A stretch of 64,000 nt of DNA from Lepidodermella squamata (Eukaryota > Animalia > Gastrotricha): assembly GCA_047495785.1 (NCBI GenBank), contig JBLDXI010000033.1:1488001-1552000 (forward strand), in the 5' to 3' direction. Of the stretch, positions 5,777 to 50,300 are shown in pieces. The first letter of the stretch is position 1. Each line of letters begins with the position of its first letter. The position numbers and the translations under genes are program-made. The notes beneath the pieces are model-generated. The model was not told where the DNA came from, did not search any database, and worked only from the letters and a program-made list of their open reading frames with translations.

Positions 5777-7767
5777 ATGAAAATTTTCCGAATTATTTTG
5801 ATTTTTCTTCATTTTTGCTGCGATTTTGGCGCAAATGCAGCAAGTGTATCGGCCTATCCTCTTTCAGGGGGTGACTACAGTCTATTAGATCCGCGGTAAG
5901 GATCAATTTCAAAAATTTCAATTAAAAATTAAACCAATTTTTTTCGAAAGACATCGGCGGATTCGGAATATTTCAGACGAAGAGCGATTGTCGAGTCGAT
6001 TATTTAGATTTTACGATGTTAGGAGCGGTCCTTACTACAACAACTCTGATATCATTCAGATTCAATTCGGTATTTCCATCGCTTCAATTTTAAAAATACA
6101 AGAGGTCAAACAAATATTGCACTGCCTCGTCTGGCTTGATTTGGTATGGAATATAAATCCATCTTAAAAATGACTGAGTCGATTATATTACCTCTCAGAG
6201 ATGGACCGATCAGAGGCTGGTATGGAACCCGAAAAATTACAATGGAATGAGTAAGATGGCTGTGCCTACGAAGCGAATATGGTATGAAAATCATAAAAAA
6301 AATTCAAAAATAATCAGAATTTTCTTTTTCTAGGTTGCCTGATATATTGCTGTAAGATTTTTAATTTTTAAATAATTAAAATTAAATTGGCAATTTTTCA
6401 GATACAATTCGGCAGAAACTCTTGATACTCGTTTCATGTACGGAATTCACGCAATTGTTGAATATACAGGGATGGTCAAAGTCATGCCTTTCATAAAAAT
6501 TCGATCGTTTTGCCCATTAGACCTGAGCATGTACCCATTCGATGAGACAGTGTAAGTGGCTTTGATAACTTCATTCAATTTGTCAAATTTTTCCCATTTT
6601 AGGTGTCCCCTCAGATTCGGATCATGGGTTTACGATAGCAGTAAATTAATTTTGACAAATCAATCGACCGAAGCTGATTTATCGCGATACTCCGAGTCAA
6701 GTAAATGGGACATCCTCGCCACAAAAGTCGACCGTATCTGGCGAAATCGACTGATTTTCCACGATTGGCCACCAAATCAGAATCTGACGCATTTGTACGC
6801 CGATCTGGAAGTTAGCCTCAGAATGCGGCGACGTTTCCTCTTCAATTACTATTTCGACATATTCATCCCATGCACTGTCATCACTGTAATCACCCTGATG
6901 TGCTTCTGGCTCGATCCAAGGGACGGCGAAAAAATCGGGCTAGGTATCGGCCTTATCCTTACCTATATCGTCTTTATGCTAGTGGTCAACAAAAGCATAC
7001 CGACTTCAAGCGACGTTTCGCCGTTGATTTCGATTTACCTTACGGTTACTATGGCCATGTCTGGAACTGTCGTAGCTGTTGAAATTCTGATGCTGAACAT
7101 TTATGGCAGGGGCAGGGAGAACTCGAGCCCACCTAAATGGCTTCACGTCCTGGTCGTTGATATTTTCGCTAGGTGTTTCAAAATTAATTTCAAGCGGAAA
7201 CACATCCGGCAGCATCGTCGTTCCAGCTTAAATCTCAGCATTTCTGAAACAATTGACAGCCTTGCGAAACCGGTGAGAAAAATTCCGACCAAGGTTAAGT
7301 TGTCCAGTGTTGGAAATATTTCACCGGTTTTGTGCCGAGTCACGTCGTTTAACGCGGATATGATGAAGACCGACGAGGAAGTGAAGCGAGACGAACTATT
7401 CAGGCGAGCCCTGGAGAACATTGCGAATGTAAATAAAGCCGAAAATGTTCTCATCAACCGAGCCCGTCGTCGATTTTCGCCAAATCGGGTGTTAAATTCG
7501 GTGAGATCGCGCGAGGAAGAGGAAATGCATAAGCGGCGGTTGATTTTGCTGGATTCTGTTCGAGACACTGTTTCTTACGCAGCGATGCGACGCCGTGATG
7601 AGAGTGCTAAGGTTAAGAACAGCGAAGAGTGGGACGTTATCGCATATACGATGGATCGACTGCTTTTCTACCTGTTTTTCTGCATTATGCTATCGTCAAA
7701 TTTTATTCTACTGTTTTGGCAGCCTCTTATGAGCCACTTGCCTCATGATCATGCTACTTTTATGTAA
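5777..7767 (+). CDS. nAChR-like Cys-loop channel subunit #4 (non-alpha type), 6 exons including an 18-nt microexon at 6334-6351
   Basis: ATG 5777 with signal peptide, RWTDQRLVW, W-LPDILL-YNS, CPLDLSMYPFDETVC, GSWVYD, DGEK, EEWDVIAYTMDR. Confidence 0.92.
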
Positions 7768-21490: not shown

Positions 21491-24028
21491 TTAACTGCCG
21501 ATTTCAGGCAGAGTTGTGTTAATGTTAAATTTGTTTTTCAACGCCGTTGCGAGTTCGATGTAAACTTTCGGATCTTCGATAGTTACAGGTATTTCGAATT
21601 TCTTCTCGTTAACCATAGCGGCCAGGGTGTTTCGAGAAATTTTGCCGCTTCGAGTTTTCGGCAGTCGTTTGCAGATGAGAATGCCGCCCGACAGCGTCGC
21701 AATGGCGCCGACATTTTTGCGCACCGATTCGCCAATTTTTTTCACCGCGTGCTCTTCGTCCTCAGCCTCGCTGTGGCCCGGCCGTTTGTGGCTGGCTTCA
21801 CTGACGGTTTTCAGCGTGCAGAATGCGAATGGAACGTGGCCCTTCAGCGAGTCTTCACGGCCAACAACGGCGGCTTCTGCGATTTCGTCGACGAGTTGAA
21901 TGGCTTCCTCGAGGGAACCGGTTGATAAGCGGTGCCCGGCAACGTTGATGACGTCATCAATGCGGCCCATGACGAAAATATTACCGGCTTTATCCATGTA
22001 GCCAGCGTCAGTGGTATTGTAGTAACCCTGAAAATTTTGGAAAAACAGTTGAAAATTTTTTAATCGAATATAAAAAAATTTTAAATTTTAAAAAATTCAA
22101 AATTTAATTTAATAATTAATAATTTTAAAATTTAAAATTTTATTTAAAATAAATTGAAACAATATTTTAAATTTTAAATTAATACCGGAAAAGCTTTGAA
22201 ATAGGATTCGATGAAGCGATCGTCCGACTTGAATAGAGTCGAGAAAGATCCAGGTGGTAATGGCATTCGAACAACGATAGTGCCGAGCTCATTCGGCTCA
22301 GCTCTAGTATGATCGCTTCTTAAAACTTCAACTGAAAAAATTCGAAAAATTACGGAAAAATTCGATATTTTTTATCAAAATTACCATGCCAACCAGGGGC
22401 GGCTTTGCCCGCTGAAGAGAGTGGTGGTAACTCTACTACGGCGTTGTGTTTTTTCGATTTCAAACCCATGAGAGTGGCGGTTATTGGCCACCCTGTTTCT
22501 GTTTGCCACCAGTGGTCGATAACCGGCTTTCCACGAAATTTCTCTCGCGCCCATACCAAAGTTGCCGGGTCGAGATGCTCGCCGGCAACAAATACTCCAC
22601 GGAGATGGTCGATGTCATATTTCGAACCTTGCTCGCAATCCGGATCCTGAAAAAATAATCGTAAAATCAATTGGTCATTCAAGTCGAGGTTCTTACAGCT
22701 TTTTTGATCGCCCTTAAAGCTGTGGGCGAGGAAAACAGACCGGCAAGTTTGTACTCTTCGATCAACCGGAAAAACGACCCGGCATCCGGGGTGCCAACAG
22801 GCTTGCCTTCATACAGCAAAGTCGGGTTGCGATGTAGCAACGGCCCGTAGCAAATAAAAGAATGACCCACAACCCAACCTAGGTCGGACGTAGCCGCCCA
22901 GTTTTCGCCGGGCTTCATGCCGTAAATACCGCTCATTGACCAGTGAAGCGCGACAGCATGCCCACCCGAAGGTCGAACGGGCGCTTTCGGGGTTCCGGTT
23001 GTTCCTGATGTGTACAGCACGTAGACAGGATCAGTCGCTAGGACTGGAACAGCATCCACCGTTTTGTTCGAACAAGCCGTAGTACTCTCGGTATAATCAA
23101 CCACGTTGTGGCCTTCGGATTTTAGGTTCGAAATATCCTGTGAGTAATCACGGTCTGAAACCTAGAAAAATGGAATGAGGGTACAATTTTGGGATTTTTT
23201 TAGAATTTTTCTTACAGCTGGACGTTGATAGACAATGACTGACTTGGGCATAAAATCCGAAATTTTCAAAGCATCGCGAACGATTGGTAGGTAAGGAATT
23301 TCGCGGTTAGGCTCGGCGCCGAATGTCGACGTAATCAGGACCTATTTTGACACAATTAATTATCCTGATTTTATCGATGGGTTTGTTACCTTTGGTTTTG
23401 CGTGGCTGATTCTCGCCGATAATTGCAGGGCAGCGAAGCCGCCGAAAACCAGCGAGTGAATGGCGCCGATCCGAGCAGACGCTAGCATTGCGAAAATGGC
23501 TTGAGGAACCATAGGCATGTAGATCAACACAACATCGCCCTTTCGAACCCCTTGCTTTTGCAAAACCGCTGCAAGGGAACACACCTATTCGAACACTGAA
23601 AACATGAGTATCCAATTTTTCGACAATTTTCGAAATCTGAATTCTAAAATTAGATTTTCTAAATTTCAAAATACCTCTCTGTGTAGTTGATTGAAGGTGT
23701 AAGATTGCTTGGTTTTGGTAACCGGGCTGTCGTAGTAGAGGGCGACAGTATCGCCAAAGCCTTCATCGATATGCCGGTCGACGGCGTTGTAGCACGTGTT
23801 CATAGTGCCGCCGACAAACCACCGCGTGAAAGGCGGGTTTGAGTGGTCCAAAATCTGATCCCATTTTTTGAACCAATGCAACTTTTCCGCCTCTTCTGCC
23901 CAGAATTCGCAATCACGAGCGAGTTGATGGTTATGGCTCTGGCGTTTCTTAAGAAGGGTGGTTGTAGTCGATATGTAGCGGTTAAAATTAACCCTCGACA
24001 CTGAAGTTTTGCGAAAAATGGAAAGCAT
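21491..24028 (-). CDS. ACSS3: Acyl-CoA synthetase short-chain family member 3 (mitochondrial propionyl/acetyl-CoA synthetase), multi-exon
   Basis: Transit-peptide-like N-terminus, [82 protein letters not shown]. Confidence 0.9.
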
Positions 24029-25016: not shown

Positions 25017-25661
25017 TTATTTTTCCGCATTTTCTTGCTTTCTCGGCCGTCGAAATTCGATAAACTTATCGACCAGAGTTGAGCTTTCGCGGTTGATGGT
25101 GTACAATTGGCCGTAATGAGCCGCGCTTTTGAGCACCCAACTGTCGATTTCATCGCAGATTTGTTTCAGCTGGTCAATATGCGACGTATCAGCGTCATAC
25201 TCAAGCCGGGCCTCGTCGACCTCACGCATGAAGGCCTCCAGCCGTTCCTCGAACTCGTCCAACGAATCTTCTTGGTTGAAGCTAGACCTCGCGGCTATGA
25301 CTGGCAGGGACTCGCGGCGAATTCTCGACGGCGATAACGGCTCTTGGGTCGAAGTTGTAAACGCCGATTGCCTTCGATTTGCTGATAATCGGTTGTTGAT
25401 CTCAAATCCGGATTTTTTGACAAAAATCGTGCCACCAGGCAGCTTGACAACAGGTGTTTTACACGCATCGACGGCTGATTTTGACTCGGCGAATTCAACA
25501 ACAGCTGTTGACGTGCTGGTGGCGATGTCGATAACTTGGCCGAATTTCGAAAAATAATCCCGAAGCTCGTCGTCACTTGGTTTAGAAACCGCCTCTCCAC
25601 CCTTGAAAGTCACGCTGATTTTCGCCTCACTTGACGATAAATTATCGTCCTGTTGTCGCAT
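25017..25661 (-). CDS. RRM-domain protein with a C-terminal coiled coil (R1)
   Basis: DELRDYFSKFGQVIDI...AVVEF..SAVDAC fits an RRM; amphipathic helical C-terminus; no introns. Confidence 0.75.
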   Translation of the reverse strand: MRQQDDNLSSSEAKISVTFKGGEAVSKPSDDELRDYFSKFGQVIDIATSTSTAVVEFAESKSAVDACKTPVVKLPGGTIFVKKSGFEINNRLSANRRQSAFTTSTQEPLSPSRIRRESLPVIAARSSFNQEDSLDEFEERLEAFMREVDEARLEYDADTSHIDQLKQICDEIDSWVLKSAAHYGQLYTINRESSTLVDKFIEFRRPRKQENAEK

Positions 25662-25936
25662 GATGGTAACTAATTACTTTTATATTACAGCAATAAAAAA
25701 ATGTGGACTCGTAGAGTGACACCAATTCAGCCACCTTATCATTAGTCGCACTGAAAACAAGTGCGAAAAACCTGGTCTTATCTTTCGGGCTGTCGGGTCC
25801 GAAGTTTTGTTATTGCGGTTATCGTTTGCACGAGAAACAGTAGTCAGTATTAACCTGGGCCGCCTTTTTTATTTGCTGACCAAAGATCAAATTAATAATA
25901 ATATATAGGTCATTTTTCTTAATTTTATTGCGGTAA

Positions 25937-26569
25937 TTAATAATCAAATTTAGTTTTAAAATGGCCAAATGCGTTGTAGTCCATAGTGTTGAAAAACTCA
26001 AGTTCGCCAACAAGACCGGTTCCGATGAGTGATTTACAGAAAGCCAGCCAATCTCTGTCGTCTGTATCACCCAGCGTAATGAATTGCAAGAACGTTTTCG
26101 GTGAGCAAATTCGTTTTACAAGATAGTGAATAGCTTCGAATTGAAAGCTGTTCGCCCCAGTTCCGAGGCCTACGAGGCGAATACGTTCAAGCGGCTGTTT
26201 CCCAAACTCCTCGCTGAGCTGCTTGACTTGCAGTGTCGATTGCTTAACATCCAATTTAGCCCGATCATGGCTTAGGCGATGGAATTTCAGAACTCGAACC
26301 AAGTCTTTATCAGTTGGGTCGAACTTGAAGAGCCGGCCAATTTCGGCCGAGTCGCATTGCCAGTTCTCATCGGTGTAATTGTCAGTAATTAACCCGAAAA
26401 ATATAGTTGTACAAGATCCAAGTGTCACATCAGTTGCATCCAGTGTAATCAAATTGCTATTCAGCGACATAGGAAAAAATGTTGTAGGAACTTCAGCTGC
26501 ATTTTCGCCAGTTATCAGCTGCGAAATCACGCTGGTTGGGGAATCAGATTTTCTCTCGGATTCATTCAT
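25937..26569 (-). CDS. Unknown alpha/beta-domain protein X1
   Basis: Intronless ORF paralogous to 26827..27519 and 29200..29892 (TIFxG, WxxDxAExGR, QFxxxGDxxDxxWLxFCK, ELEFxNxxDxxxFGxF). Confidence 0.85.
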   Translation of the reverse strand: MNESERKSDSPTSVISQLITGENAAEVPTTFFPMSLNSNLITLDATDVTLGSCTTIFFGLITDNYTDENWQCDSAEIGRLFKFDPTDKDLVRVLKFHRLSHDRAKLDVKQSTLQVKQLSEEFGKQPLERIRLVGLGTGANSFQFEAIHYLVKRICSPKTFLQFITLGDTDDRDWLAFCKSLIGTGLVGELEFFNTMDYNAFGHFKTKFDY

Positions 26570-26826
26570 TTTTTACACTGGAAATAAAAAATCTCGAGAA
26601 TAAAAAGTCACAATATACCAGCACGAGTCAAATCGTGATTCATCTTACACAACTAAAATATTCCTGTAATTGTGCTTTGTTTTATCATGAAACATGACTC
26701 ATTGTATGTATGTGCATGCAGTTGGCTTGGAACGGTGATATAAATTCCGAGTGTTATCACGAGTATTTTTTCATGATTATATAAAGAGTGTTATTCGCAT
26801 TTTCAATTATCTAAACCTAAAGCAAA

Positions 26827-27519
26827 ATGGATGAAAGGTTACTGGAGATGCTACGTCGCCGCATGGCGGATGCTTCGAGCCGGGCGAAAAGTTCAGCGAA
26901 TGGGGATAGCAGCGATGATGAAGAAACGACCAATACAGCGACCGGCGACAAGTCAGCCCCGGGCACGTCGTATTTCCCTGCCGAGGTCCTGAGCCCAACA
27001 ATCAAATTTGTCAGCGTTCCACTTCGCCGCGAGCCAGCCGCGACCATTTTTTTCGGTCTGGTTACCGAAAATTACCCACTGCAAAGCTGGCAAATCGATG
27101 CTGCGGAAGTCGGCCGGTTGCTGAGATTCGACGCCGACGACGAATCGCAGTGCCGACACCTGAAATTCGTGCCGGAAAAGGGCAACAGCCAGCGGCTGGA
27201 CATTGGCCAGGCGGTTAAGCAAATTCAGACAATTCTAGAAGGCTCGGAGCCGTTCAACAAACCTTCCATGCCCTTCATCCGGTTCGTTAGGATGGGCAAT
27301 AGCGGGCATTCTTTCCTGTACGATTCGGTTAAATACATTCTGAAGAAACTTGGCTCGCCGTCGATGAAAATTCAATTCGTCACGCTTGGCGATTCGGGAG
27401 ATCACGACTGGCTGGTTTTCTGCAAAAATCTATGTGGCACTGGCCAAGTTGCGGAACTTGAATTCCTGAACCCGTTGGACTTCAACCCTTTCGGCTATTT
27501 CCGGGAGAAAACCGATTAA
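26827..27519 (+). CDS. Unknown alpha/beta-domain protein X2
   Basis: Same conserved motifs; TATATAA at ~26779 upstream. Confidence 0.88.
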   Translation: MDERLLEMLRRRMADASSRAKSSANGDSSDDEETTNTATGDKSAPGTSYFPAEVLSPTIKFVSVPLRREPAATIFFGLVTENYPLQSWQIDAAEVGRLLRFDADDESQCRHLKFVPEKGNSQRLDIGQAVKQIQTILEGSEPFNKPSMPFIRFVRMGNSGHSFLYDSVKYILKKLGSPSMKIQFVTLGDSGDHDWLVFCKNLCGTGQVAELEFLNPLDFNPFGYFREKTD

Positions 27520-27744
27520 ACACGAACTTTACCTTTTCCTTATATCCAAGGAATTGATTATGTTGCATTGTAATCCGCAAAAAATCGTTGAATAATAAAT
27601 GAGAAATACCTTAGCCTTGTTGCAGTTTTAAATTAATCGACAAAGCACGACGTATTGCGGTGGCAGTATGTACTACACTGCACCGAATGTCATTCATACA
27701 GGCTATTATTTAGTTTTCGAGTGGTTCTTTCGCGTGATTTTTAA

Positions 27745-28161
27745 ATGTCCAACGATGGCAAGGGCGAAATTCTAGTCACCTTCGACGAAGATTTGCCAAC
27801 GTTACATACCGATTCGTTAAACAAATATTTCTCACAATTTGGTCCGGTAAAATCTATAACTGTCATCAACCCTCGATCAGTTGTGGTCAGATTGCGGGCT
27901 ATACCGAGTCCTGAATTAATTAATGCGGAATTGGACGACATTATGGACAGGTCGGCAATGTTACTTCTCGAGGCAGATCAACTCGAGCGAGAAGCTCGTC
28001 GTAGTAAGGCTGAGCTGAAGCGAATCCGCGCGTCTCTGGACGATTTCGGGAGGCAAGTAATGGAAACAGCGACTTTGGCTGATGAACTAACTTCTATTTC
28101 ACGATTTTCGAGCGAAATTATTGAGACCTTCATAAATTCTGAGATGTTCAAAGATTTATGA
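27745..28161 (+). CDS. Truncated-RRM plus coiled-coil protein (R2), paralog of R1
   Basis: LNKYFSQFGPVKSI RRM half; C-terminal LTSISRFSSEIIETFI matches R1 LYTINRESSTLVDKFI. Confidence 0.7.
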   Translation: MSNDGKGEILVTFDEDLPTLHTDSLNKYFSQFGPVKSITVINPRSVVVRLRAIPSPELINAELDDIMDRSAMLLLEADQLEREARRSKAELKRIRASLDDFGRQVMETATLADELTSISRFSSEIIETFINSEMFKDL

Positions 28162-28730
28162 CCTTTTTTATTAATATTAATTTTTAATAATAATTTTAAT
28201 TTCAATAATTATTTATTAATAAATTATTACTATTTTTGACCTGAAAAAATTGTTTAATTCGATTGTAAACATACCAAAAGCTGAGGATGATTGTACATAA
28301 GCGCATCAATGAAATAATCATGACCTCCATTGATAAGGGATTTGTAGAAACAAAGCGAATCTCGCGGTTCGATCCGCATAAGGTGTGGGAATAAAAAGAG
28401 CAATCACATCGCATCGCTCGAAGCAATAATACTAAAATATTATACATCGCAATTGATTATTTGTCTAAAAGTCACGATCGTAAAACACTGATTCAGATTT
28501 GCTGTACCTATCAATAATTATCGCCTATTTCTTCCGTTAAGCGCAGCGAAATCATGTATTATTGCCATCATTTTGAAGCCCTAATGATATCGTTTTTTAT
28601 AAGTGTTGCATTGGCAACGTAATAACTTCTCACCTGTATTTGACACTTTAATGGAAAATTACTGCTAAAAATCGACTTCCTATAGATAGACTTGTGAATT
28701 GTTAATCATTACCCGCTCAACGAATGAGCA

Positions 28731-29177
28731 ATGACAGTCCGATTATTGCTAATTTTTTCACTTAATTTCTTGTCATCGGCTTATGCGGTGATTTGCTACC
28801 AAAGCATCGGCGGTGAATCATCCAGACGACTGCTCATCGAAAGCAACGGCTGTAAAGTTTGCAACCTAGTAAGGATCTACCGAGCCCCGCCTCACATCAA
28901 AATTAAGGAAGATTGCCCATCGAACGACACGCTTCACCTATTCATACCTCTGATGCCGATTCACAGCTGTTTCACGTCAACTCAGCCGGAATTTAGCTGT
29001 GAGAACAGGTGTAACCAGTTGAGGAGGCACATGTCGACAACAGATCGCCTCATCGAATGCCGATGTTGCTCGGAAAATTTTTGCAATTATTTCGATCAAG
29101 AAACTAACTCAGCTAATAATAGGCACTCGTTTTATTTATCATTATTTATAGTGAAATTGATCATTTTTCTGGATTAA
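28731..29177 (+). CDS. Ly6/uPAR (three-finger, quiver-like) protein, probably GPI-anchored
   Basis: Signal peptide, ICY start, C..C, SCF, ECRCCxxxxCN end motif, hydrophobic C-terminal tail. Confidence 0.8.
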   Translation: MTVRLLLIFSLNFLSSAYAVICYQSIGGESSRRLLIESNGCKVCNLVRIYRAPPHIKIKEDCPSNDTLHLFIPLMPIHSCFTSTQPEFSCENRCNQLRRHMSTTDRLIECRCCSENFCNYFDQETNSANNRHSFYLSLFIVKLIIFLD

Positions 29178-29199
29178 ATGCTGTAATATTCTTTTTTGT

Positions 29200-29892
29200 T
29201 TATTTTTCGCGGAAATAACCAAATGGGTCGTAGTCGAGTGGGTTGAAAAATTCAAGCTCGGATACAACCTCAGTTCCGCATAGATTTTTGCAGAAAACCA
29301 GCCATTCATGGTCTGACGTATCACCGACCGAAATAAATTGAATCTTCAGCTTGGGCGAGCCGTAAGTCTTGAGAACGTGCTTAACCGAGTCGAATAGAAA
29401 CGGCGTGTTCGCCTTGCCCATGCGGATGATGCGCATAAAGTCGACACGGCGGCCGTTGCTAAACGGCGGCATCGAGCCGATTTGCTGCAGCATCTGAACG
29501 CCGTACTTCATATCGACGGCGTTCGACGAGCCTTTTTCCGGCACGAATTTCGCGTGGTGAACCAGCGACGCGTCTTTGGCGTCGAATTGGAAAACTCGGC
29601 CGATTTCTGCGGCGTCAATGTCCCAACTAGCGTCGTTGAATGATGGCGTTACAATGCCGAGGAAAATCGTCGGGCATGGGCCGGTTGTCACGTTTTGGCT
29701 GACGATTTTCAGCGTGTTGCTGAGTACTTCAGACGGGAAGTAGGACGTATTTTTCGGCGCGCCGTTTTCACCCTGTGTAGTTTCATTTTCATCGTCACTG
29801 CCAGCCACTTCGGTTATTCTAGCGCCACCAGCCGATGAAGACGACGCCGTCGCCATGCCTCTTAGCATTTGAAGGAACAGATCGCTGTCCAT
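29200..29892 (-). CDS. Unknown alpha/beta-domain protein X3
   Basis: Closest to X2 (TSYFPxEVLSxT, KFVPEKGxS, WLVFCKNLCGT, NPLDxxPFGYFREK). Confidence 0.88.
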   Translation of the reverse strand: MDSDLFLQMLRGMATASSSSAGGARITEVAGSDDENETTQGENGAPKNTSYFPSEVLSNTLKIVSQNVTTGPCPTIFLGIVTPSFNDASWDIDAAEIGRVFQFDAKDASLVHHAKFVPEKGSSNAVDMKYGVQMLQQIGSMPPFSNGRRVDFMRIIRMGKANTPFLFDSVKHVLKTYGSPKLKIQFISVGDTSDHEWLVFCKNLCGTEVVSELEFFNPLDYDPFGYFREK

Positions 29893-30384
29893 TTCAATTA
29901 ACAGGAAAAGTAAAAATCCTACTTGACAGTAACAGAAAATTGCAGGAATAAAACTGCGATATCCTTATCTCTACAAATTGTTGGGCGAAAGTATTTAATG
30001 ACGATTATTCAGCACCGTGATATCAAACGGGAATATTTCTTGGTACTAAAAGCTTATCTCAAACTTGCTTTTTTCATGCCTTCAAATGTTCGTGAATTAT
30101 ATGAGCGGTTGAATTACAATCTTGACTCACTAAAATCCAGAGTGGTGGAAAGCATGATGAATGGATGAAAAAAACAAAACACGTATCAGTTGTTATGATT
30201 CATCTTCAACTTTTTCCTCTCCAAAACGTTGTAGAATAAGCAACACAACACACGTTTTTTATAGAGAATTTTAATACGAAGCGCCATGAATAATTTATTT
30301 TAAATTCAAGTACCATTTGTTGGCTTCGTTCATTTTCTGATGATCGCATTTGATAATACATTATAGAACTGTTGGTTATTGGTA

Positions 30385-30547
30385 GGCTCAGCGTGAATAC
30401 GGCTCCGATATTGATGCACGTGATTTTTTTTCTTCGTAAACAAAACACGCGACACAATAGCAAAAAACAGGCGATGTGTGGTGTCGTGAGATTTTCGGTC
30501 GCAAAAAATCACATGCATCAATATGGAAGCCGTATTCACACTGAGCC
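30385..30547. mobile_element. Palindromic MITE (GGC...GCC termini, PIF/Harbinger-like)
   Basis: GGCTCAGCGTGAATACGGCTCCGATATTGATGCACGTGATTTTTT and its imperfect reverse complement. Confidence 0.7.
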
Positions 30548-31650
30548 CTCGAATTATAACGGGTATTTACGCGAACCTTAGACGCATCGCTTTGGTCAAC
30601 AGGCAAAAAATGGTTGACTAAGAGTATACGAACGTGTATCGACGGTGTAGCTATTAATTCGCGAAAAATTGCCTACTTTCATTTATCACGGGCTTGTCAT
30701 CCTACGCCTTACGTTCTTCGAAGCGCTAAGCTATTCATGTAGAGATGTGGTTGATGTTCCCGAGAAACGAGGACGCGTAAGGCCGAAAGCTAGTAGAGCA
30801 GCCGGTTTCATCGGAGCCTCAACCTGCCCCAGTTGCTGAAGGTCGCTGGTTCAACCGTCACTGCTCGCACAGGAATTAGCGATTTTTGCGAAATCGCAAA
30901 CTTGAGCAGATACAGTGTATAGAGATGATTCACAACAGGCAATGCACAGGAGGTTGCGTGAAACCCTCGTTAAAAATCATCTTTTATTTCGATGGAAACA
31001 TGGTGGGATTGAGGACGTCTAATTTTGAAGACCACACGCTAGGATGGCCCTGACAGTCGAGAATTTTAAGTTCGCCTTGCCAGCATATTGAGTGTAAGGG
31101 CAGGCTGGCTATATAGTTCAACTGAAACATGAGTGGAATTAAACTCAAACGATTCTAAAAATACCCAAACTTGTGATGAAAGGTTCTAGAAGTAAGTGAG
31201 ATGATTTGACCATCACCGTGCTATTTAGACCACTTTTACGTGGCAGGTTTTTCGGAGTATTCTGAGTCTGGTAGATATTTCTGAGATTATTTTATTTCAG
31301 CTAATATTATTAGCAATACACAGTTGTCTTGTCCATGAATTAAGTTTCATGTTCGATGCAAAAGCGGCAACAAGCGAAGTTTCAAATTTCATCAAGAAAA
31401 TCTTGACTTGTGCTATACGAGCGACAATGGCAGATTAAATCAAGAAGAATATACAACAAATAACGAGCATCTTCAGATAAATGTTAATGTTAATCACAAT
31501 TAAATGCATTGTAATCAATCCACAATCGAACGCGATTTATACAGTTTGAAAATCATAGGCATGACAAGAGTGGCTTGGATAAATACAGAATATTACATAC
31601 ATATATATATTAAAAATATATTATCAAATGATTTCATTCCCGAGTCTGTT

Positions 31651-33657
31651 TCACCACAGTTTGAATGTTTGGGGCAAAAACTTCTTCAAATATTTTTTCC
31701 AAGCACTGTCATCCTTTCTGTACTTTTCAAAAGGATCATAATTCGGATCTTTCGATTGAGCGATGAGCGTTGCCATTTCCAATTGATCTTCCAGGTGGAC
31801 AAGTCGTTCCGTGTAGCCAGGTTGTTTCGTTCGCTTTTCTTCGCGGATTAATTCCTATAAAATTAACAGAAATGCATAAGCTTTGAAATAAGTAAAAAGA
31901 ACCTCCTCCGCAAACCTCAATGTAGTCAACCTCAGTCATTTTGTCTTGGACATAGGCGATCTGGTAAAGTCGATTGATCGAGTCCCTCATGCTTTGCACC
32001 AACACACTTACTTCACGCTTCTTTTCCATCATTTGGCTGGCAAGGGCTTCAAGGAGCCTGACGGCGGAGGCTTTTTCTTCCGTAGCATTGTTATACTTGC
32101 GCAGCATATCTTCCTTGGTTATTGTTTTTTTGACCATGCGCTTTTTCCACACAAAGGGCAAATTTTGATGCAAGTCCCAGGCGCACTTCTTCGGACAGGC
32201 GGTGCATTTTCCGTTGGCCATCGCGCAACAATCCATCTTGTCTACATTATTATTGTACAGACAACGCTCGTGACAGGTGAAGAGACAAACTAAACAGTTT
32301 GTGGTATTTTGCCCATTTGGAACTCTTTCCTGCACAAAATTAGGCTTAGACACATGAGAATAGAGATAAAACAAACTAACTATACCTCAAAGCCTTCTGG
32401 TTCTTCTATGACCACTTTGAAATCTCGGTTCCGAGCAATTTCGGCGTCATGGTCTGCAATCACGTTGGCTTCTTTTCGCATCGTTTCCACCGCATTAATT
32501 CCGTCTTCAATTTGCCGCTTGAGAGCTCGAACGAGGCAATGCAACGCGCGCCGCTCTTGCAAAACATCCTGCGTGAGAGTAAGGCTTCTAGCAGGCATTT
32601 TCTGAACGGTTTGGCAAAAGTCGCGATACGCATCCATGCCCATCTCCCAGAAAGCAGGTGCCAGCTTCTTGTTTTGCTTTTCTTGCGGGAAAACAGCGCT
32701 GTTGTTGAAGACATGATAGCCGTCAAATTCTATTCCCGACTCTTTGATAGCGTCCAAACACGGCGGTTCTCCATCGTCGCCAAACGTGATGACCGGCACA
32801 ACATGCCCTTTCATATCTTTCCCAAAAATGCTGATCACCGCGTTGAACTGATACTTGGTCGTGGCCGTGAGTCTGGTCTCAGCGTTTTTGACAACCAAAC
32901 ATATCGCATTCAGCTGATCGAGACCATTCGAGCCACTGTGCTTGAACCAATGCTCAATAAACTTTGTAGTTTCCTGGTCACGTCGGATACCTCCGTCGGT
33001 GTCACCGTAGCCTGGCGTATCAACCACAATCAACCGATAGCCCAAGATATTATCATTGAAAACATAGGAAGATACAAATTTTGTTTTGCTGCTAGCTGAG
33101 GAGACGACACCACTTTCTTCGTTTTCTTCAACCTGTTCCAGGAATATTAAATATAAGCAAAACGCAAATGAGCAAAGGTCTTTGAATACCTCAGACACGA
33201 TTTTGAATCGAAAATCATCCTCGAATTCGACTCCAAACAAGAAATTCGCCATCGAATTGAGAAAGGTTGTTTTGCCACTGCCGGTTGCGCCCACAACCAG
33301 AATGACCCTGTCTTCCCACAGATCCCTTCGTTCGCCGAGTTGAAACATGCGGACACCACCAATGTTTGCTTTGTTTCGGCTTTCGTCAGCGTCAGTCCAA
33401 GCCAGGTCGAAGGTTTGCTGGTGGAGCAGAGTTTTCGGCGCCATAAAAATCTTCTTGATACATGGCCTGCTTTCGTGAAGAAGCTCCGTTGATAACTCCT
33501 TAATCCTCAGGGCTAGCCTTTGTGGTGGAAGCTCTTCGGGAGGTTCTTCTTCGCCGATTGGAAGATCTCCAATTCCGATAGGAAGTTCTATAGGAAGTTC
33601 TGGCCCCACTCTCGAGGTTGGGATATCATTCTGGTCGTAATATTCAAATTTTCTCAT
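31651..33657 (-). CDS. TRAFAC-class GTPase (septin/AIG1-like G domain) with coiled coils and a Cys/His-rich domain; 4 exons
   Basis: G1 GATGSGKT, G3 DTPGYGD, G4-like TFGD; NCLVCLFTCHERC...CCAM...CTACPKKCAWDLH; last exon ELIREEKRTKQPGYTERL...FKLW* obtained by manual splicing. Confidence 0.85.
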
Positions 33658-47343: not shown

Positions 47344-50300
47344 ATGACTCAAATCAACCACTTCTACGCGCTTGTTTTTTTCGCCTTCGTTGCGACCGTT
47401 CGCAAATGCAGCGGTCAAGTATTTGGGTATGTTAGCCATCATTTAGAAGCTATCTCACCTGGCAATTAAATCACCACTATTGTAACCTCAGATGCCAGCC
47501 TCAACAATATGATACCCACTGCTATCAGTTACAAGGAATAGGAAAATGCTGTTTCGGTGAACCGTTGCCGCCCATTGTGTCACCCGACGGCGTTACTTTC
47601 CGAGTCTTCAACCGGTCAACCAACAAATTCGATTCATTCTCCCCAGAACATTCTCAGTAAGTTTTAATTAATAAAAAATCCAATTTTTCTCCAAGTCCAC
47701 TAGTAGTCCCAATTCACTTGACGAGATTTCCAACATTTTATGTGTACGCTAATTAAGGCTGGCAATGCGATGTCATCCATTCCAGAACGCGGTCAAAATT
47801 TTTTTTCCAAAAAAGTATCGCTTCTCGGCCTTTTTGGCTATGATCAAAGTGTAGTATCTGTTCTTTGTAGTTTAATATCTACAACGCCCTCCATGTGGGG
47901 GCTACGATATTGACCCGATTTTTGGCCGCCCGGGCAGGTGTCGCCAGCTTGCTGGACCCTGTCCACGAGTCGGCCCGGTATTGCAGTACCTCCGGGATTC
48001 GGCTCACCCCCATTCGTGGGGGAATGAAACTAAAAACAAAAAACACCTTGAAACCAGGCTGAGATCAATCTTATTATTGGGATTGGGGGTTATTTTCGAA
48101 GCCGTCTTTATCGATATCGCCTGGAAATGATTTCAACTTTATTGCACTAAAGTCGGCTTCATCTCGCAAGCATAATTGTACTACGGTCGATAAATGTTCT
48201 ATAACGGCCGATTTTTGACCGAAATCAAACGTTTTGACCTCAAAAACACATGTTGACCTATTTATATAACGAATTAGAGCAATAAAAGGTTTTATTGCTG
48301 TTAAGAGGCTGTCAAAGAAGAAGGTCACAGCTAATGATGAGCAATGTACTTGCGCCTGGTTTTTATGCCACATAAAGCTGGCTTTATCGATAGTCGGTTT
48401 ACCATAAAGACAGCTACGAAAATAACCCCCATTGGCAATTCCCGCATTCTTTTAGCTTCTCACCTGAAGCTCAGCATTGCTAGTTGAAAATTGCGTTAAA
48501 TTTTGTTGTTGAAAATGCATAAAAAATATCTTTCAAATATCAATCTTTGATCGCAACTGATTGCTGAAATCTGAAGTCAGTTTTATGCTGAATTCATTTT
48601 GTTTCTCTACTTTTTGCTAGTATCGAACGGTGCGTGTTCATCCTCGTTCATGGGCACATGTCCAGTTCGCGCGCCAAGTGGCTGCTCGACGTTGCGAAAC
48701 GCATCCACCGCGTCGGCCAGTGTCTCGTACAGAAGAACGAATACGCGAGCATGGGCGCGAGCAAGGGCATCGACACGCTACAGGGCACAGTTGTCAGCTA
48801 CAACACCGACATGCCACACATTCTCGTACCGCCAACCGTCATAGCCATCGACTGGTCACGACCGGCTGCGCCAATGTACGAACAAGCGGCGGCTAACGCT
48901 AAGGCAGTAGGCCGTGCGGTTGGGACAATCTTGGCTGCTAGCCAACTTTTCACAACTTGGCGGCCGAAGATTCACTGTATAGGCCAGGGCCTGGGCGCGC
49001 ATGTCTGCGGAATAGCTGGTTCAGTGTACGGTGACTTCAAACGCATCACTGCACTCGACCCGGCCAGACCGCTGTTCGAAGAGAGCGAAGACGGTATCCA
49101 CTTCCATCCAAGTCTAAGGCTTGACAAATCAGACGCTTCATTCATCGATGTTATTCATAGTAAGAATATTTTAATTTAATTTAATTTATTTTATTCAATT
49201 TAATTTTTTATTATTTCCAGCTACGGCGAGACTTGGCGCACAAGCTCCGATTGGCCATGTTGACTTTTACGTAAATGGCTTAAGAAATGGGACTTTGATC
49301 CGTCATTCTCAGCCATTTTGCAATACCGAACTCGATGTGAACAAAACTAGATGTAAGTTTTTGCTTACAAATTACAGTGCTTACTTCAAAAAGCTTATGA
49401 ACTTTAAAAATTTATAAATTTTCGTAAAATTATTTCATTGACGATTTTAATTTAAATTTCTAAAATTATTAATTACCGATTTATCATTTTTTATTTAAAT
49501 TTATTAAATTTACCGGATTTATTACCGGATTTATTACCGATTTATCATTTTTTTATGTAAATTTTTTAAATTTAAATTTATTTAATATTTGCAGTGTGCA
49601 GTCAAAACCGCGCGCATGAAATTTTCCGCGACTCGTTTTTGAGGCGCTGCTATTTCGGCAAATGTTCCGATGCGCCAAAGTCATTACAAGCCCGAAAGTG
49701 CGAAGTTGGCTGGCGGTCTTACAAATGCGTCCAACACGGCGTTTATTGCGGCGCCACTGACATAGACCCAACTACGTCCGAAATCACGTGCGCCGACACG
49801 ATTGGCGACGATCGAGATGCGAACGGGACTTTAATCGAATTACCTGCTACCGTCACGCCGAAAACTACGCCATCAGTGACAGCGGAATTTCTCGAAACAA
49901 TCAACCCGGATCAGCGGAAATTTCGCGTTTCCATGTCTCATCATAACGTAGTGCCTAGCGCTCACCCATTAGTTGCGGCGAAAAAACTCCACGGCGCTGC
50001 CACAATTGACGTAGAACCGCCGAATAAACGGAAACCAACTACGACAACAACAACGACTACTACAACCACGACGACTCAACCTACGACTTCTATTGCAGCA
50101 ACGACAGAATTACCGTACTACGACGCGACCGTAACTGAATACCCGGAAATGTTGCCAACAGCCGGATATTACAACCCTGTGGCTCAAATCAAGAAAACCG
50201 AACTAGTCCTACCGCCGCATAGTTGGGAGCAAACTTCCCCGAAAGCTTTGTCTCGGTTTCAAAAATTGAGAGGCAATTGCCGCGGAATCGCTATCGGAAC

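What the first reader, a model, noticed from the sequence alone, without database searches (positions are those of the whole stretch)
25017..29892. Two-gene module duplicated as a unit: unknown alpha/beta protein (possibly NYN/PIN-like) plus RRM-coiled-coil protein
Seen: the layout is R1<-X1<- ->X2->R2, a mirror-image duplication of an X-then-R pair with only 225-275 bp between partners, plus a third X. The copies are strongly diverged yet all intact and intronless, which suggests long co-retention. X has five alternating beta/alpha units. Inference from by-eye comparison: the motif order resembles the NYN (MARF1/LabA-type PIN) nuclease fold. Beta1 TIFFGLVTENY sits where that fold has VFWDxENC, and the acidic loop GDxxD(H/R)(D/E)W after beta4 sits where it has SGDxDF, but the first catalytic Asp is absent. 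Established: MARF1 combines NYN and RRM domains in one chain. This could therefore be a split, lineage-specific RNA-processing or RNA-defence system. A degenerate vWA fold is the alternative.
Basis: partly seen in the sequence, partly recalled or inferred. Interest (0 to 1): 0.75.

Follow-up and report, generated by a model that had tools for sequence, protein, structure and literature searches.

The report
Mirror-duplicated orphan two-gene module
A small invertebrate genome carries mirror-image copies of a gene pair: a protein from a family found in no Pfam or PDB search, followed by a small helical partner with an RRM-like head. The pairing is old and real, but the idea that the first protein is an RNA-cutting NYN enzyme finds no support.

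Summary
R1&lt;-X1&lt;- -&gt;X2-&gt;R2 plus a third X are five intact single-exon ORFs at the stated coordinates. X1-X3 are 37-52% identical and R1/R2 are weakly but collinearly related.

The NYN/PIN reading is not supported:
- There is no Pfam signal in 48 family members.
- The NYN profile finds a true NYN gene elsewhere in this genome but nothing at the X loci.
- Only one acidic position of the supposed catalytic set is conserved.

X belongs to a family with no Pfam or PDB-sequence match. It has about 96 clusters in public environmental data, all unnamed, and eight loci in this genome.

New here: two distant X paralogues on other contigs (X5, X6) are each followed, same strand, by homologous small coiled-coil genes (S5, S6). 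They sit in separate well-supported clades (AU p=0.007), so the "X + small coiled-coil partner" linkage predates the local duplication.

R's RRM lacks the RNA-stacking aromatics. Function is unknown; I favour a protein complex of X with its partner.

The parts
25017..25661 (-). R1, 214 aa. RRM-clan domain (about aa 14-83), Ser/Arg-rich linker, C-terminal helical or coiled-coil tail. Lies 275 bp downstream of X1.
   Evidence: ORF. Pfam RRM_1 E=2.4e-5, 24.6 bits against a cut-off of 20.7. Collinear similarity to R2. Weak ESM hits to RRM-clan clusters, at most 0.81. No relatives in the word search or elsewhere in the genome.
25937..26569 (-). X1, 210 aa, single exon. Member of the unannotated alpha/beta 'X' family (clade C).
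   Evidence: AATAAA at 25924-25929(-), 8 nt after the stop codon.
26570..26826 (.). 257-bp divergent intergenic region between the X1 and X2 start codons. Presumed shared or bidirectional promoter region; it holds TATA-like tracts.
   Evidence: Sequence read. The promoter role is an inference.
26827..27519 (+). X2, 230 aa, single exon. This is the protein that was modelled: an acidic N-terminal tail, then a compact alpha/beta domain at residues about 50-228.
   Evidence: AlphaFold2 with the 48-sequence alignment gave pLDDT 89.3, pTM 0.77. AATAAA at 27594-27599(+).
27745..28161 (+). R2, 138 aa. Truncated RRM-like head (beta1-alpha1-beta2-beta3 only) running straight into a helical or coiled-coil tail. 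Lies 225 bp downstream of X2.
   Evidence: ORF. RRM_1 E=0.0073, below the cut-off. Alignment to R1. No other copy in the genome.
29200..29892 (-). X3, 230 aa, single exon. Closest paralogue of X2 (52% aa; 72% DNA identity as an inverted repeat). No R-type partner downstream.
   Evidence: No partner ORF or remnant was found.

Best explanation
X1-X3 are cytosolic members of an undescribed eukaryotic protein family that matches no Pfam family and no solved relative. The core is about 160 residues and forms a three-layer alpha/beta sandwich (beta1-alpha1-beta-hairpin-alpha2-beta3-alpha3-beta4-alpha4-beta5). This topology is shared by vWA and small-G domains, but X has no MIDAS, no P-loop and no NYN acidic set. 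The ancestral X gene already carried a small gene directly downstream on the same strand. That partner encodes a short beta-rich or RRM-like head and a C-terminal coiled coil. The pair was copied as a unit: the inverted X1-R1 / X2-R2 duplication in this window, and X5-S5 and X6-S6 on other contigs. Some copies lack the partner (X3, X4, X7, X8). Inferred mechanism (not shown): X and its partner form a complex. The partner would oligomerise through its coiled coil and dock its pseudo-RRM head on X. X would bind an unknown small ligand, metal or phospho-group at the C-terminal edge of its sheet, where the conserved positions cluster: Gly77 loop, invariant Gly157 loop, Gly188 followed by an always-acidic 189, D/N125, and N215-T-x-D218. 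It is not a NYN/PIN nuclease, and nothing shows a link to RNA.
For: - Family: a profile search of 1.84 billion representatives gave 96 hits, 35 of them below 1e-30, all unnamed and from metagenome or SRA-derived assemblies.
- No known relatives: no Pfam hit for any of 48 members at E<=10 and no PDB sequence relative.
- Conserved positions: R152 and G157 are invariant, residue 189 is acidic in 48/48, residue 125 is D/N in 48/48, and T73 and G223 are nearly invariant.
- Partner linkage: X1-R1 and X2-R2. X5 and X6 are each followed at +103 and +182 nt by S5 and S6, which are homologous exon by exon (E=5e-8 and 4e-9).
- Age of the linkage: X5 and X6 lie in separate clades (96/90 and 95/84 support) and joining them is rejected (AU p=0.007). 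X5 is sister (99/94) to the X1-X4 clade that carries R.
- Cytosolic: no signal peptide, and some relatives are tail-anchored.
- Pseudo-RRM: R1 and R2 lack aromatic residues at RNP2 position 2 and RNP1 positions 3 and 5 (read directly, against the established RRM consensus).
Against: - No direct evidence of an X-partner interaction, co-expression or any biochemical activity.
- R and S show no detectable homology to each other, so 'the same partner' rests on position, size and a C-terminal coiled coil.
- Half of the X loci (X3, X4, X7, X8) have no partner, so X can presumably work alone.
- The conserved Gly/acidic loops could be structural rather than ligand-binding.
Confidence: 0.5

Rival explanations
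1. First reader's reading. X is a degenerate NYN/PIN-like ribonuclease and R supplies the RNA-binding RRM in trans, giving a split MARF1-like RNA-processing or RNA-defence system.
For: The loop after beta4 (LGDSGDHDW) resembles the SGDxDF loop of NYN/LabA domains (direct reading). R1 passes the RRM_1 threshold.
Against: - The NYN profile (PF01936) finds one true NYN gene on contig C1 but nothing at any X locus, even at E<=10.
- No NYN/PIN hit for 48 family members, in the PDB sequence-profile search, or among the top 50 of four fold searches with a pLDDT-89 model.
- Across the family only one acidic residue of that loop is conserved, and the Asp after beta1 is absent.
- R lacks the RNA-stacking RNP aromatic residues.
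Confidence: 0.03
2. X is a non-catalytic pseudo-enzyme scaffold of the G-domain/vWA topological class, like class i pseudoGTPases such as AAGAB/Irc6p or the MIDAS-less Rpn10 vWA. It would act purely as a protein-protein adaptor for its coiled-coil partner and bind no ligand.
For: - The order of secondary-structure elements, with a beta-hairpin after alpha1, equals that of G and vWA domains.
- Rpn10 vWA gives Foldseek E=6.5e-4 then 9e-3. ESM features point to vWA clusters at 0.86-0.88.
- Class i pseudoGTPases work as interaction domains (PMC12490416).
Against: - SDR, caspase-like, TIR and receiver-like folds score equally.
- The strand order of the model could not be inspected because coordinates are not exposed.
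- An invariant acidic residue and Gly-rich loops at the sheet's C-terminal edge are more typical of a ligand site.
Confidence: 0.25
3. There is no functional coupling. X and its downstream neighbour are simply adjacent genes that were carried along together in segmental duplications, and R and S are unrelated, fast-evolving or de novo small genes.
For: R and S are not detectably homologous. Four of eight X loci lack a partner. X3 and X4 instead sit next to Ly6/uPAR-like genes, which shows that neighbours do travel with X. The X5 and X6 regions are rich in transposon fragments.
Against: S5 and S6 are homologous although their X genes belong to clades that split long ago. The same strand, order and short spacing (103-275 nt) recur in all four pairs. 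All four partners remain intact ORFs, and S5 even has a clean 53-nt GT-AG intron. This is hard to explain without selection on the linkage.
Confidence: 0.17
4. The pair is a selfish toxin-antidote-type or otherwise conflict-driven element. This would explain tight linkage, fast divergence, copy-number change and lineage restriction.
For: Tight two-gene linkage, strong divergence between copies, patchy partner loss and TE-rich surroundings of X5 and X6.
Against: The copies are old (37-52% identity), not young. The family is broad, with 96 clusters in three deep clades. No toxin-like domain was found and there are no presence/absence data.
Confidence: 0.05

Closest known systems
NYN / LabA-type PIN-like nucleases (Pfam PF01936; MARF1, Regnase, N4BP1)
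   Same: Small alpha/beta domain with an acidic G-D-x-x-D-type loop after the fourth strand. MARF1 combines NYN with RRM domains (established knowledge).
   Different: No profile match. No structural match in the top 50 of any search. The Asp after beta1 is absent and only one acidic position is conserved family-wide. X has a beta-hairpin after alpha1 that PIN folds lack (the PIN topology is from my own knowledge).
vWA domains, especially MIDAS-less Rpn10/PSMD4
   Same: Same order of elements (betaA-alpha1-beta hairpin-alpha-beta-alpha-beta-alpha-beta). Weak Foldseek hits, E=6.5e-4 to 3e-2, TM 0.34-0.40. Weak ESM-feature neighbours.
   Different: No Pfam VWA match in any of 48 members. No DxSxS...T...D MIDAS. 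X is shorter and lacks the last helices. The scores are not distinguishable from other doubly wound folds.
Class i pseudoGTPases (AAGAB psGD, yeast Irc6p, CENP-M) and Rag/Arf small GTPases
Small RRM-clan proteins (Pfam RRM_1, DUF1866, DUF4523/C6orf201-like)
   Same: R1 passes RRM_1. Weak hits to DUF1866 (R1) and DUF4523 (R2), and the same families appear among the ESM neighbours.
   Different: R1 and R2 lack the RNP1/RNP2 aromatic residues. R2 keeps only beta1-alpha1-beta2-beta3. Both are fused to a coiled-coil tail. No homologues were found by word search.

Membership tests
NYN (PF01936) / PIN-like nuclease | Significant match to the NYN sequence profile | tested here: not met
   No hit for X1-X3 at E<=1 or for 48 family members at E<=10. 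The NYN profile run over the whole genome at E<=10 hits only a true NYN gene on C1.
NYN (PF01936) / PIN-like nuclease | Set of three to four conserved acidic residues, including an Asp after beta1 | tested here: not met
   Beta1 is followed by G-x-x-T/D-x-x-Y with no conserved Asp. Across the family only position 189 is always acidic and position 125 is D/N.
NYN (PF01936) / PIN-like nuclease | PIN-like fold recovered by structure comparison | tested here: not met
   With the pLDDT 89.3 model there is no PIN/NYN entry in the top 50 of Foldseek-PDB, VIA wide (48,161 chains), VIA second look or BFVD.
vWA domain | Match to the VWA profiles (PF00092/PF13519) | tested here: not met
   None in 48 members at E<=10.
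vWA domain | MIDAS motif DxSxS...T...D | tested here: not met
   Absent from the alignment and the conservation table. Some true vWA domains such as Rpn10 also lack it.
vWA domain | vWA fold | tested here: inconclusive
   Rpn10 vWA gives Foldseek E=6.5e-4 (first model) and 9e-3 (second model), TM 0.34-0.40. This is no better than unrelated folds.
Small GTPase / class i pseudoGTPase | G1 P-loop GxxxxGK[ST] and the G3-G5 motifs | tested here: not met
   The loop after beta1 is G-x5-[YF]-x. There is no NKxD or SAK. Class i pseudoGTPases lack these motifs too (PMC12490416).
Small GTPase / class i pseudoGTPase | Canonical G-domain fold | tested here: inconclusive
RRM (R1, R2) | Pfam RRM_1 above the gathering score | tested here: met
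   R1: 24.6 bits against 20.7. R2: 16.6 bits, below the cut-off, but collinear with R1.
RRM (R1, R2) | RNP1/RNP2 aromatic residues that stack on RNA | tested here: not met
   R1: RNP2 is I-S-V-T-F-K, RNP1 is T-A-V-V-E-F. R2: RNP2 is I-L-V-T-F-D, RNP1 is S-V-V-V-R-L. The aromatic residues at RNP2 position 2 and RNP1 positions 3 and 5 are missing (read; the consensus is from established knowledge).
RRM (R1, R2) | RNA binding | not testable with these tools
   Needs EMSA or CLIP.

The most novel reading that the evidence does not exclude
X plus its small coiled-coil partner is an ancient, obligate two-component system built on a new ligand-binding or enzymatic alpha/beta domain. Selection has kept it as a linked gene pair through at least one deep duplication in a rotifer-like lineage and its relatives. 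The pseudo-RRM/coiled-coil protein acts as the adaptor that targets or switches X.
Probability: 0.3. Interest if true: 0.6.

Novelty: categorically new. Interest (0 to 1): 0.42.

Why it matters
Conserved two-gene cassettes are unusual in animal genomes. A cassette built on a protein family absent from Pfam and the PDB, yet with about a hundred diverged clusters in environmental data, points to cell biology that has not been studied in small invertebrates or protists.

The label 'categorically new' means only that the family could not be placed in any known kind. Every family considered failed a defining test. It does not mean a new mechanism was shown.

In practice the result removes a tempting but wrong annotation (NYN nuclease / split MARF1). 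It also gives a clean set for experiments: four X-partner pairs, a confident model, and a short list of invariant residues (T73, D/N125, R152, G157, D/E189, G223).

Tried and rejected
- The word-index protein search gave nothing for X2, R1 and S6.
- It then found nothing in metagenome contigs (A5 and P0020), genome contigs or viral contigs.
- R against S: BLASTP gave at best E=0.037 and hhalign gave probability 0, so homology is not claimed.
- No R or S remnants lie downstream of X3, X4, X7 or X8.
- Caspase/CPD-like reading: the His and Cys positions are not conserved (His161 in 3 of 7 paralogues; the conserved Cys lies inside helix alpha4), so it was rejected as a catalytic reading.
- SGNH 'GDS' reading: the Ser is often Thr/Asn/Pro and the motif follows beta4, not beta1, so it was rejected.
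- GxGxxG Rossmann reading of the loop after beta3: only the first Gly is invariant, so it was rejected.
- Extra Pfam domains in long or extended family members: none.
- Organism identity: a paper search on assembly statistics was useless. 'Probably a rotifer' comes only from other agents' notes.
- The S5 spliced model was compared exon by exon by reference.
Full report
**Observation**

The window is G000:C33:1488001-1552000, from a 121-Mb animal assembly. Other agents of this scan think it is probably a rotifer; I did not confirm that.

- R1, 25017-25661(-), 214 aa
- X1, 25937-26569(-), 210 aa
- X2, 26827-27519(+), 230 aa
- R2, 27745-28161(+), 138 aa
- X3, 29200-29892(-), 230 aa

The X-to-R gaps are 275 and 225 bp, and the X1 and X2 start codons are 257 bp apart. 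X1-X3 align over their whole length at 37-52% identity. X2 and X3 are still recognisable as 72%-identical inverted DNA repeats.

R1 and R2 share two collinear similarities, the RRM N-terminus (E=7e-4) and the helical tail (E=5e-5). R1 passes Pfam RRM_1 (24.6 bits, cut-off 20.7). R2 scores 16.6 bits and keeps only beta1-alpha1-beta2-beta3 before the helical tail.

An AATAAA follows each X stop codon (25924-25929 on the minus strand; 27594-27599 on the plus strand). X and R therefore look like separate, tightly packed genes and not one spliced gene.

**What X is not**

Pfam gives nothing for X1-X3 at E<=1. It gives no recurrent family for 48 family members scanned one by one at E<=10.

The NYN profile PF01936, run over the whole genome at E<=10, finds one genuine NYN gene on contig C1 (37.8 bits) and nothing at any X locus. 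A profile of the family finds no relative among all PDB sequences.

With seven paralogues AlphaFold2 gave pLDDT 71.7. With 48 family members it gave pLDDT 89.3 and pTM 0.77. Neither model has a standout structural neighbour:
- BFVD: E=2.4e-3.

There is no conserved Asp after beta1. The NYN reading is therefore not supported.

**What X is**

A profile search of 1.84 billion representative proteins found 96 relatives (78 below 1e-10, 35 below 1e-30). All twenty that I looked up come from metagenome, JGI/IMG or SRA-derived (Logan) assemblies. They are unnamed or called 'hypothetical protein' and sit mostly on contigs of about 1 kb.

Variants include a natural tandem X-X fusion (P0001), members with N-terminal extensions or internal inserts, and four with a C-terminal membrane anchor. 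No extra Pfam domain was found in ten longer or extended members, including the long form X7. X has no signal peptide, so the domain is cytosolic.

The family signature is:
- P51
- T73-x-F-x-G77
- Y83, W88, D91
- D/N125 (48/48)
- R152-I-V-x-L-G157 (R and G invariant)
- W175, K180
- Q183-F-x-T-x-G188-[DE]189 (acidic in 48/48)
- F-C-K-x-L-C-x4-C
- F-Y-N-T-x-D-Y-x-P-F-G223

The Gly-rich and acidic positions sit at the C-terminal ends of beta1, beta3, beta4 and beta5. That is where doubly wound folds usually bind ligands, and this is the basis for my inference of a ligand, metal or phosphate site. It is an inference only.

The genome itself holds eight X loci:
- X1-X3 in the window
- X4, 4 kb before the window
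- X5 on C17, with an identical copy on C39
- X6 on C46
- X7, a 516-aa long form on C46
- X8, an interrupted tandem copy of X7

**The partner**

This is the main new result. I scanned 1.5 kb downstream of every X. Besides R1 and R2, X5 is followed at +103 nt and X6 at +182 nt by a small same-strand gene (S5, S6).
- S6 is a 119-aa single-exon ORF ending in a coiled coil.
- S5 has two exons (L012 6165-6302 and 5992-6108, minus strand) separated by a 53-nt GTAAGT...AG intron.

The two S5 exons match S6 residues 10-51 (E=5e-8) and 67-102 (E=4e-9). The exons were compared one by one by reference; I built no joined sequence.

In a careful maximum-likelihood tree of 48 family members, three major clades are well supported:
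- Clade A (100/99) holds X7.
- Clade B (95/84) holds X6.
- Clade C (96/90) holds X5, which is sister (99/94) to X1-X4 plus the external P0007.

Forcing X5 and X6 together is rejected (AU p=0.007). So homologous S genes accompany X genes that separated at a deep split of the family. The R-bearing X1/X2 clade is the sister of S-bearing X5.

The simplest reading is that 'X followed by a small coiled-coil gene' is ancestral to clades B and C. R would then be either a very diverged S or a replacement at the same position. Sequence comparison cannot decide between these (BLASTP at best E=0.037; hhalign nil).

X3, X4, X7 and X8 have no partner or remnant. X3 and X4 instead each sit next to a Ly6/uPAR-like gene.

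**R and RNA**

R1 is RRM-clan by Pfam and by weak ESM-feature neighbours. However, the three aromatic positions that stack on RNA in canonical RRMs are Ser/Thr/Val in R1 and Leu/Val/Val in R2 (direct reading against the established consensus). R2 lacks half the domain. A protein-binding pseudo-RRM is therefore at least as likely as an RNA binder. Nothing supports an RNA-processing or RNA-defence role.

**Most likely mechanism**

I commit to the following. X is a cytosolic alpha/beta domain with a probable ligand site at the C-terminal edge of its sheet. It works in a complex with the small protein encoded just downstream. That partner oligomerises through its coiled coil and contacts X through its head.

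What is shown:
- the family exists and is widespread;
- the fold class, in general terms;
- the conserved positions;
- the repeated, ancient linkage.

What is inferred: the physical interaction, the ligand site, and any function.

**Limits**
- Scans of metagenome, genome and viral contigs returned nothing. Synteny outside this genome and the taxa of the relatives are unknown.
- Model coordinates are not exposed, so the strand order could not be checked.
- No expression data were available.

**Verdict**

The NYN/MARF1 interpretation is not supported. The object is a real, old two-gene module built on a protein family with no Pfam or PDB-sequence match and no known function. Interest is moderate at 0.42. 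It is not placeable in any known kind, but no mechanism has been demonstrated.

Noticed in passing
window 28731-29177 (+); L014 7808-8293 (+) = G000:C33:1485807-1486292: ORF of 148 aa with a signal peptide, ten Cys, a C-terminal 'CCSENFCN' motif and a hydrophobic tail. From my own knowledge this looks like a GPI-anchored Ly6/uPAR three-finger protein; Pfam is blank. It lies next to X3, and a 161-aa paralogue lies 1.1 kb downstream of X4, so X and this gene were also co-duplicated.
   Followed up: partly
G000:C33:1483820-1484662 (L014 5820-6662, +), about 4 kb before the window start: Fourth X paralogue of the same chromosomal cluster (X4, 280 aa, with a 22-residue insert before beta4). It has no partner gene.
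   Followed up: partly
L012 6405-7025(-) with S5 at 5992-6302(-); L015 5384-6187(+) with S6 at 6369-6728(+): Distant X paralogues X5 (C17; an identical copy is on the 71-kb contig C39, probably a haplotig) and X6 (C46). Each has a homologous small coiled-coil gene just downstream.
   Followed up: yes
L016 4799-6349(+); L027 3687-4859 and 5184-5432(+) (G000:C46, about 637-646 kb): A long form of X (X7, 516 aa) has a roughly 290-residue N-terminal extension with no Pfam match. Its tandem copy X8 is interrupted between the two ORFs by a frameshift, insertion or intron. Each is followed by a paralogous secreted-looking gene on the opposite strand.
   Followed up: partly
L012 1916-3116; L015 8801-10000; also C4, C20, C30, C33:37798, C75: A young repeat (98-99% identical copies, at least seven loci) encodes a 98-aa HTH-like ORF and a 121-aa coiled-coil ORF. 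Two of the copies lie 2.7-3.4 kb downstream of the X5-S5 and X6-S6 pairs. A repeat of about 285 bp also flanks X5-S5 on both sides and lies upstream of X6, and a non-LTR reverse-transcriptase ORF is adjacent (L012 8027-9451). These are probably just TE-rich neighbourhoods.
   Followed up: partly
window 31736-33657 (-): Intronless 425-aa P-loop GTPase ORF with weak AIG1/GIMAP, septin and dynamin-type hits, directly followed in the same orientation by a 212-aa Cys-rich ORF. It may be one immune-type GTPase gene.
   Followed up: no
window 47817-48012 (+): Complete U2 spliceosomal snRNA gene (Rfam RF00004, 157.7 bits).
   Followed up: no
window 22350-24028 (-): Multi-exon acyl/acetyl-CoA synthetase-like gene (recognised by eye from the ORF translations) just upstream of R1. 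It shows that the X/R cluster sits among ordinary intron-bearing host genes.
   Followed up: no
X family alignment A3, positions 199/203/208 of X2: A C-x3-C-x4-C triad is conserved in about 40 of 48 family members. The third Cys is Val in the window's own clade. It may be a metal or redox site that this clade has lost.
   Followed up: no
window 30378-30554: Inverted repeat with 52-nt arms, 87% complementary, 73 nt apart, in the intergenic region beyond X3. Hairpin- or MITE-like.
   Followed up: no
G000:C1:3663972-3664388 (-): The genome's one clear NYN-domain gene by the PF01936 search (E=1.7e-7). It is unrelated to the X loci.
   Followed up: no
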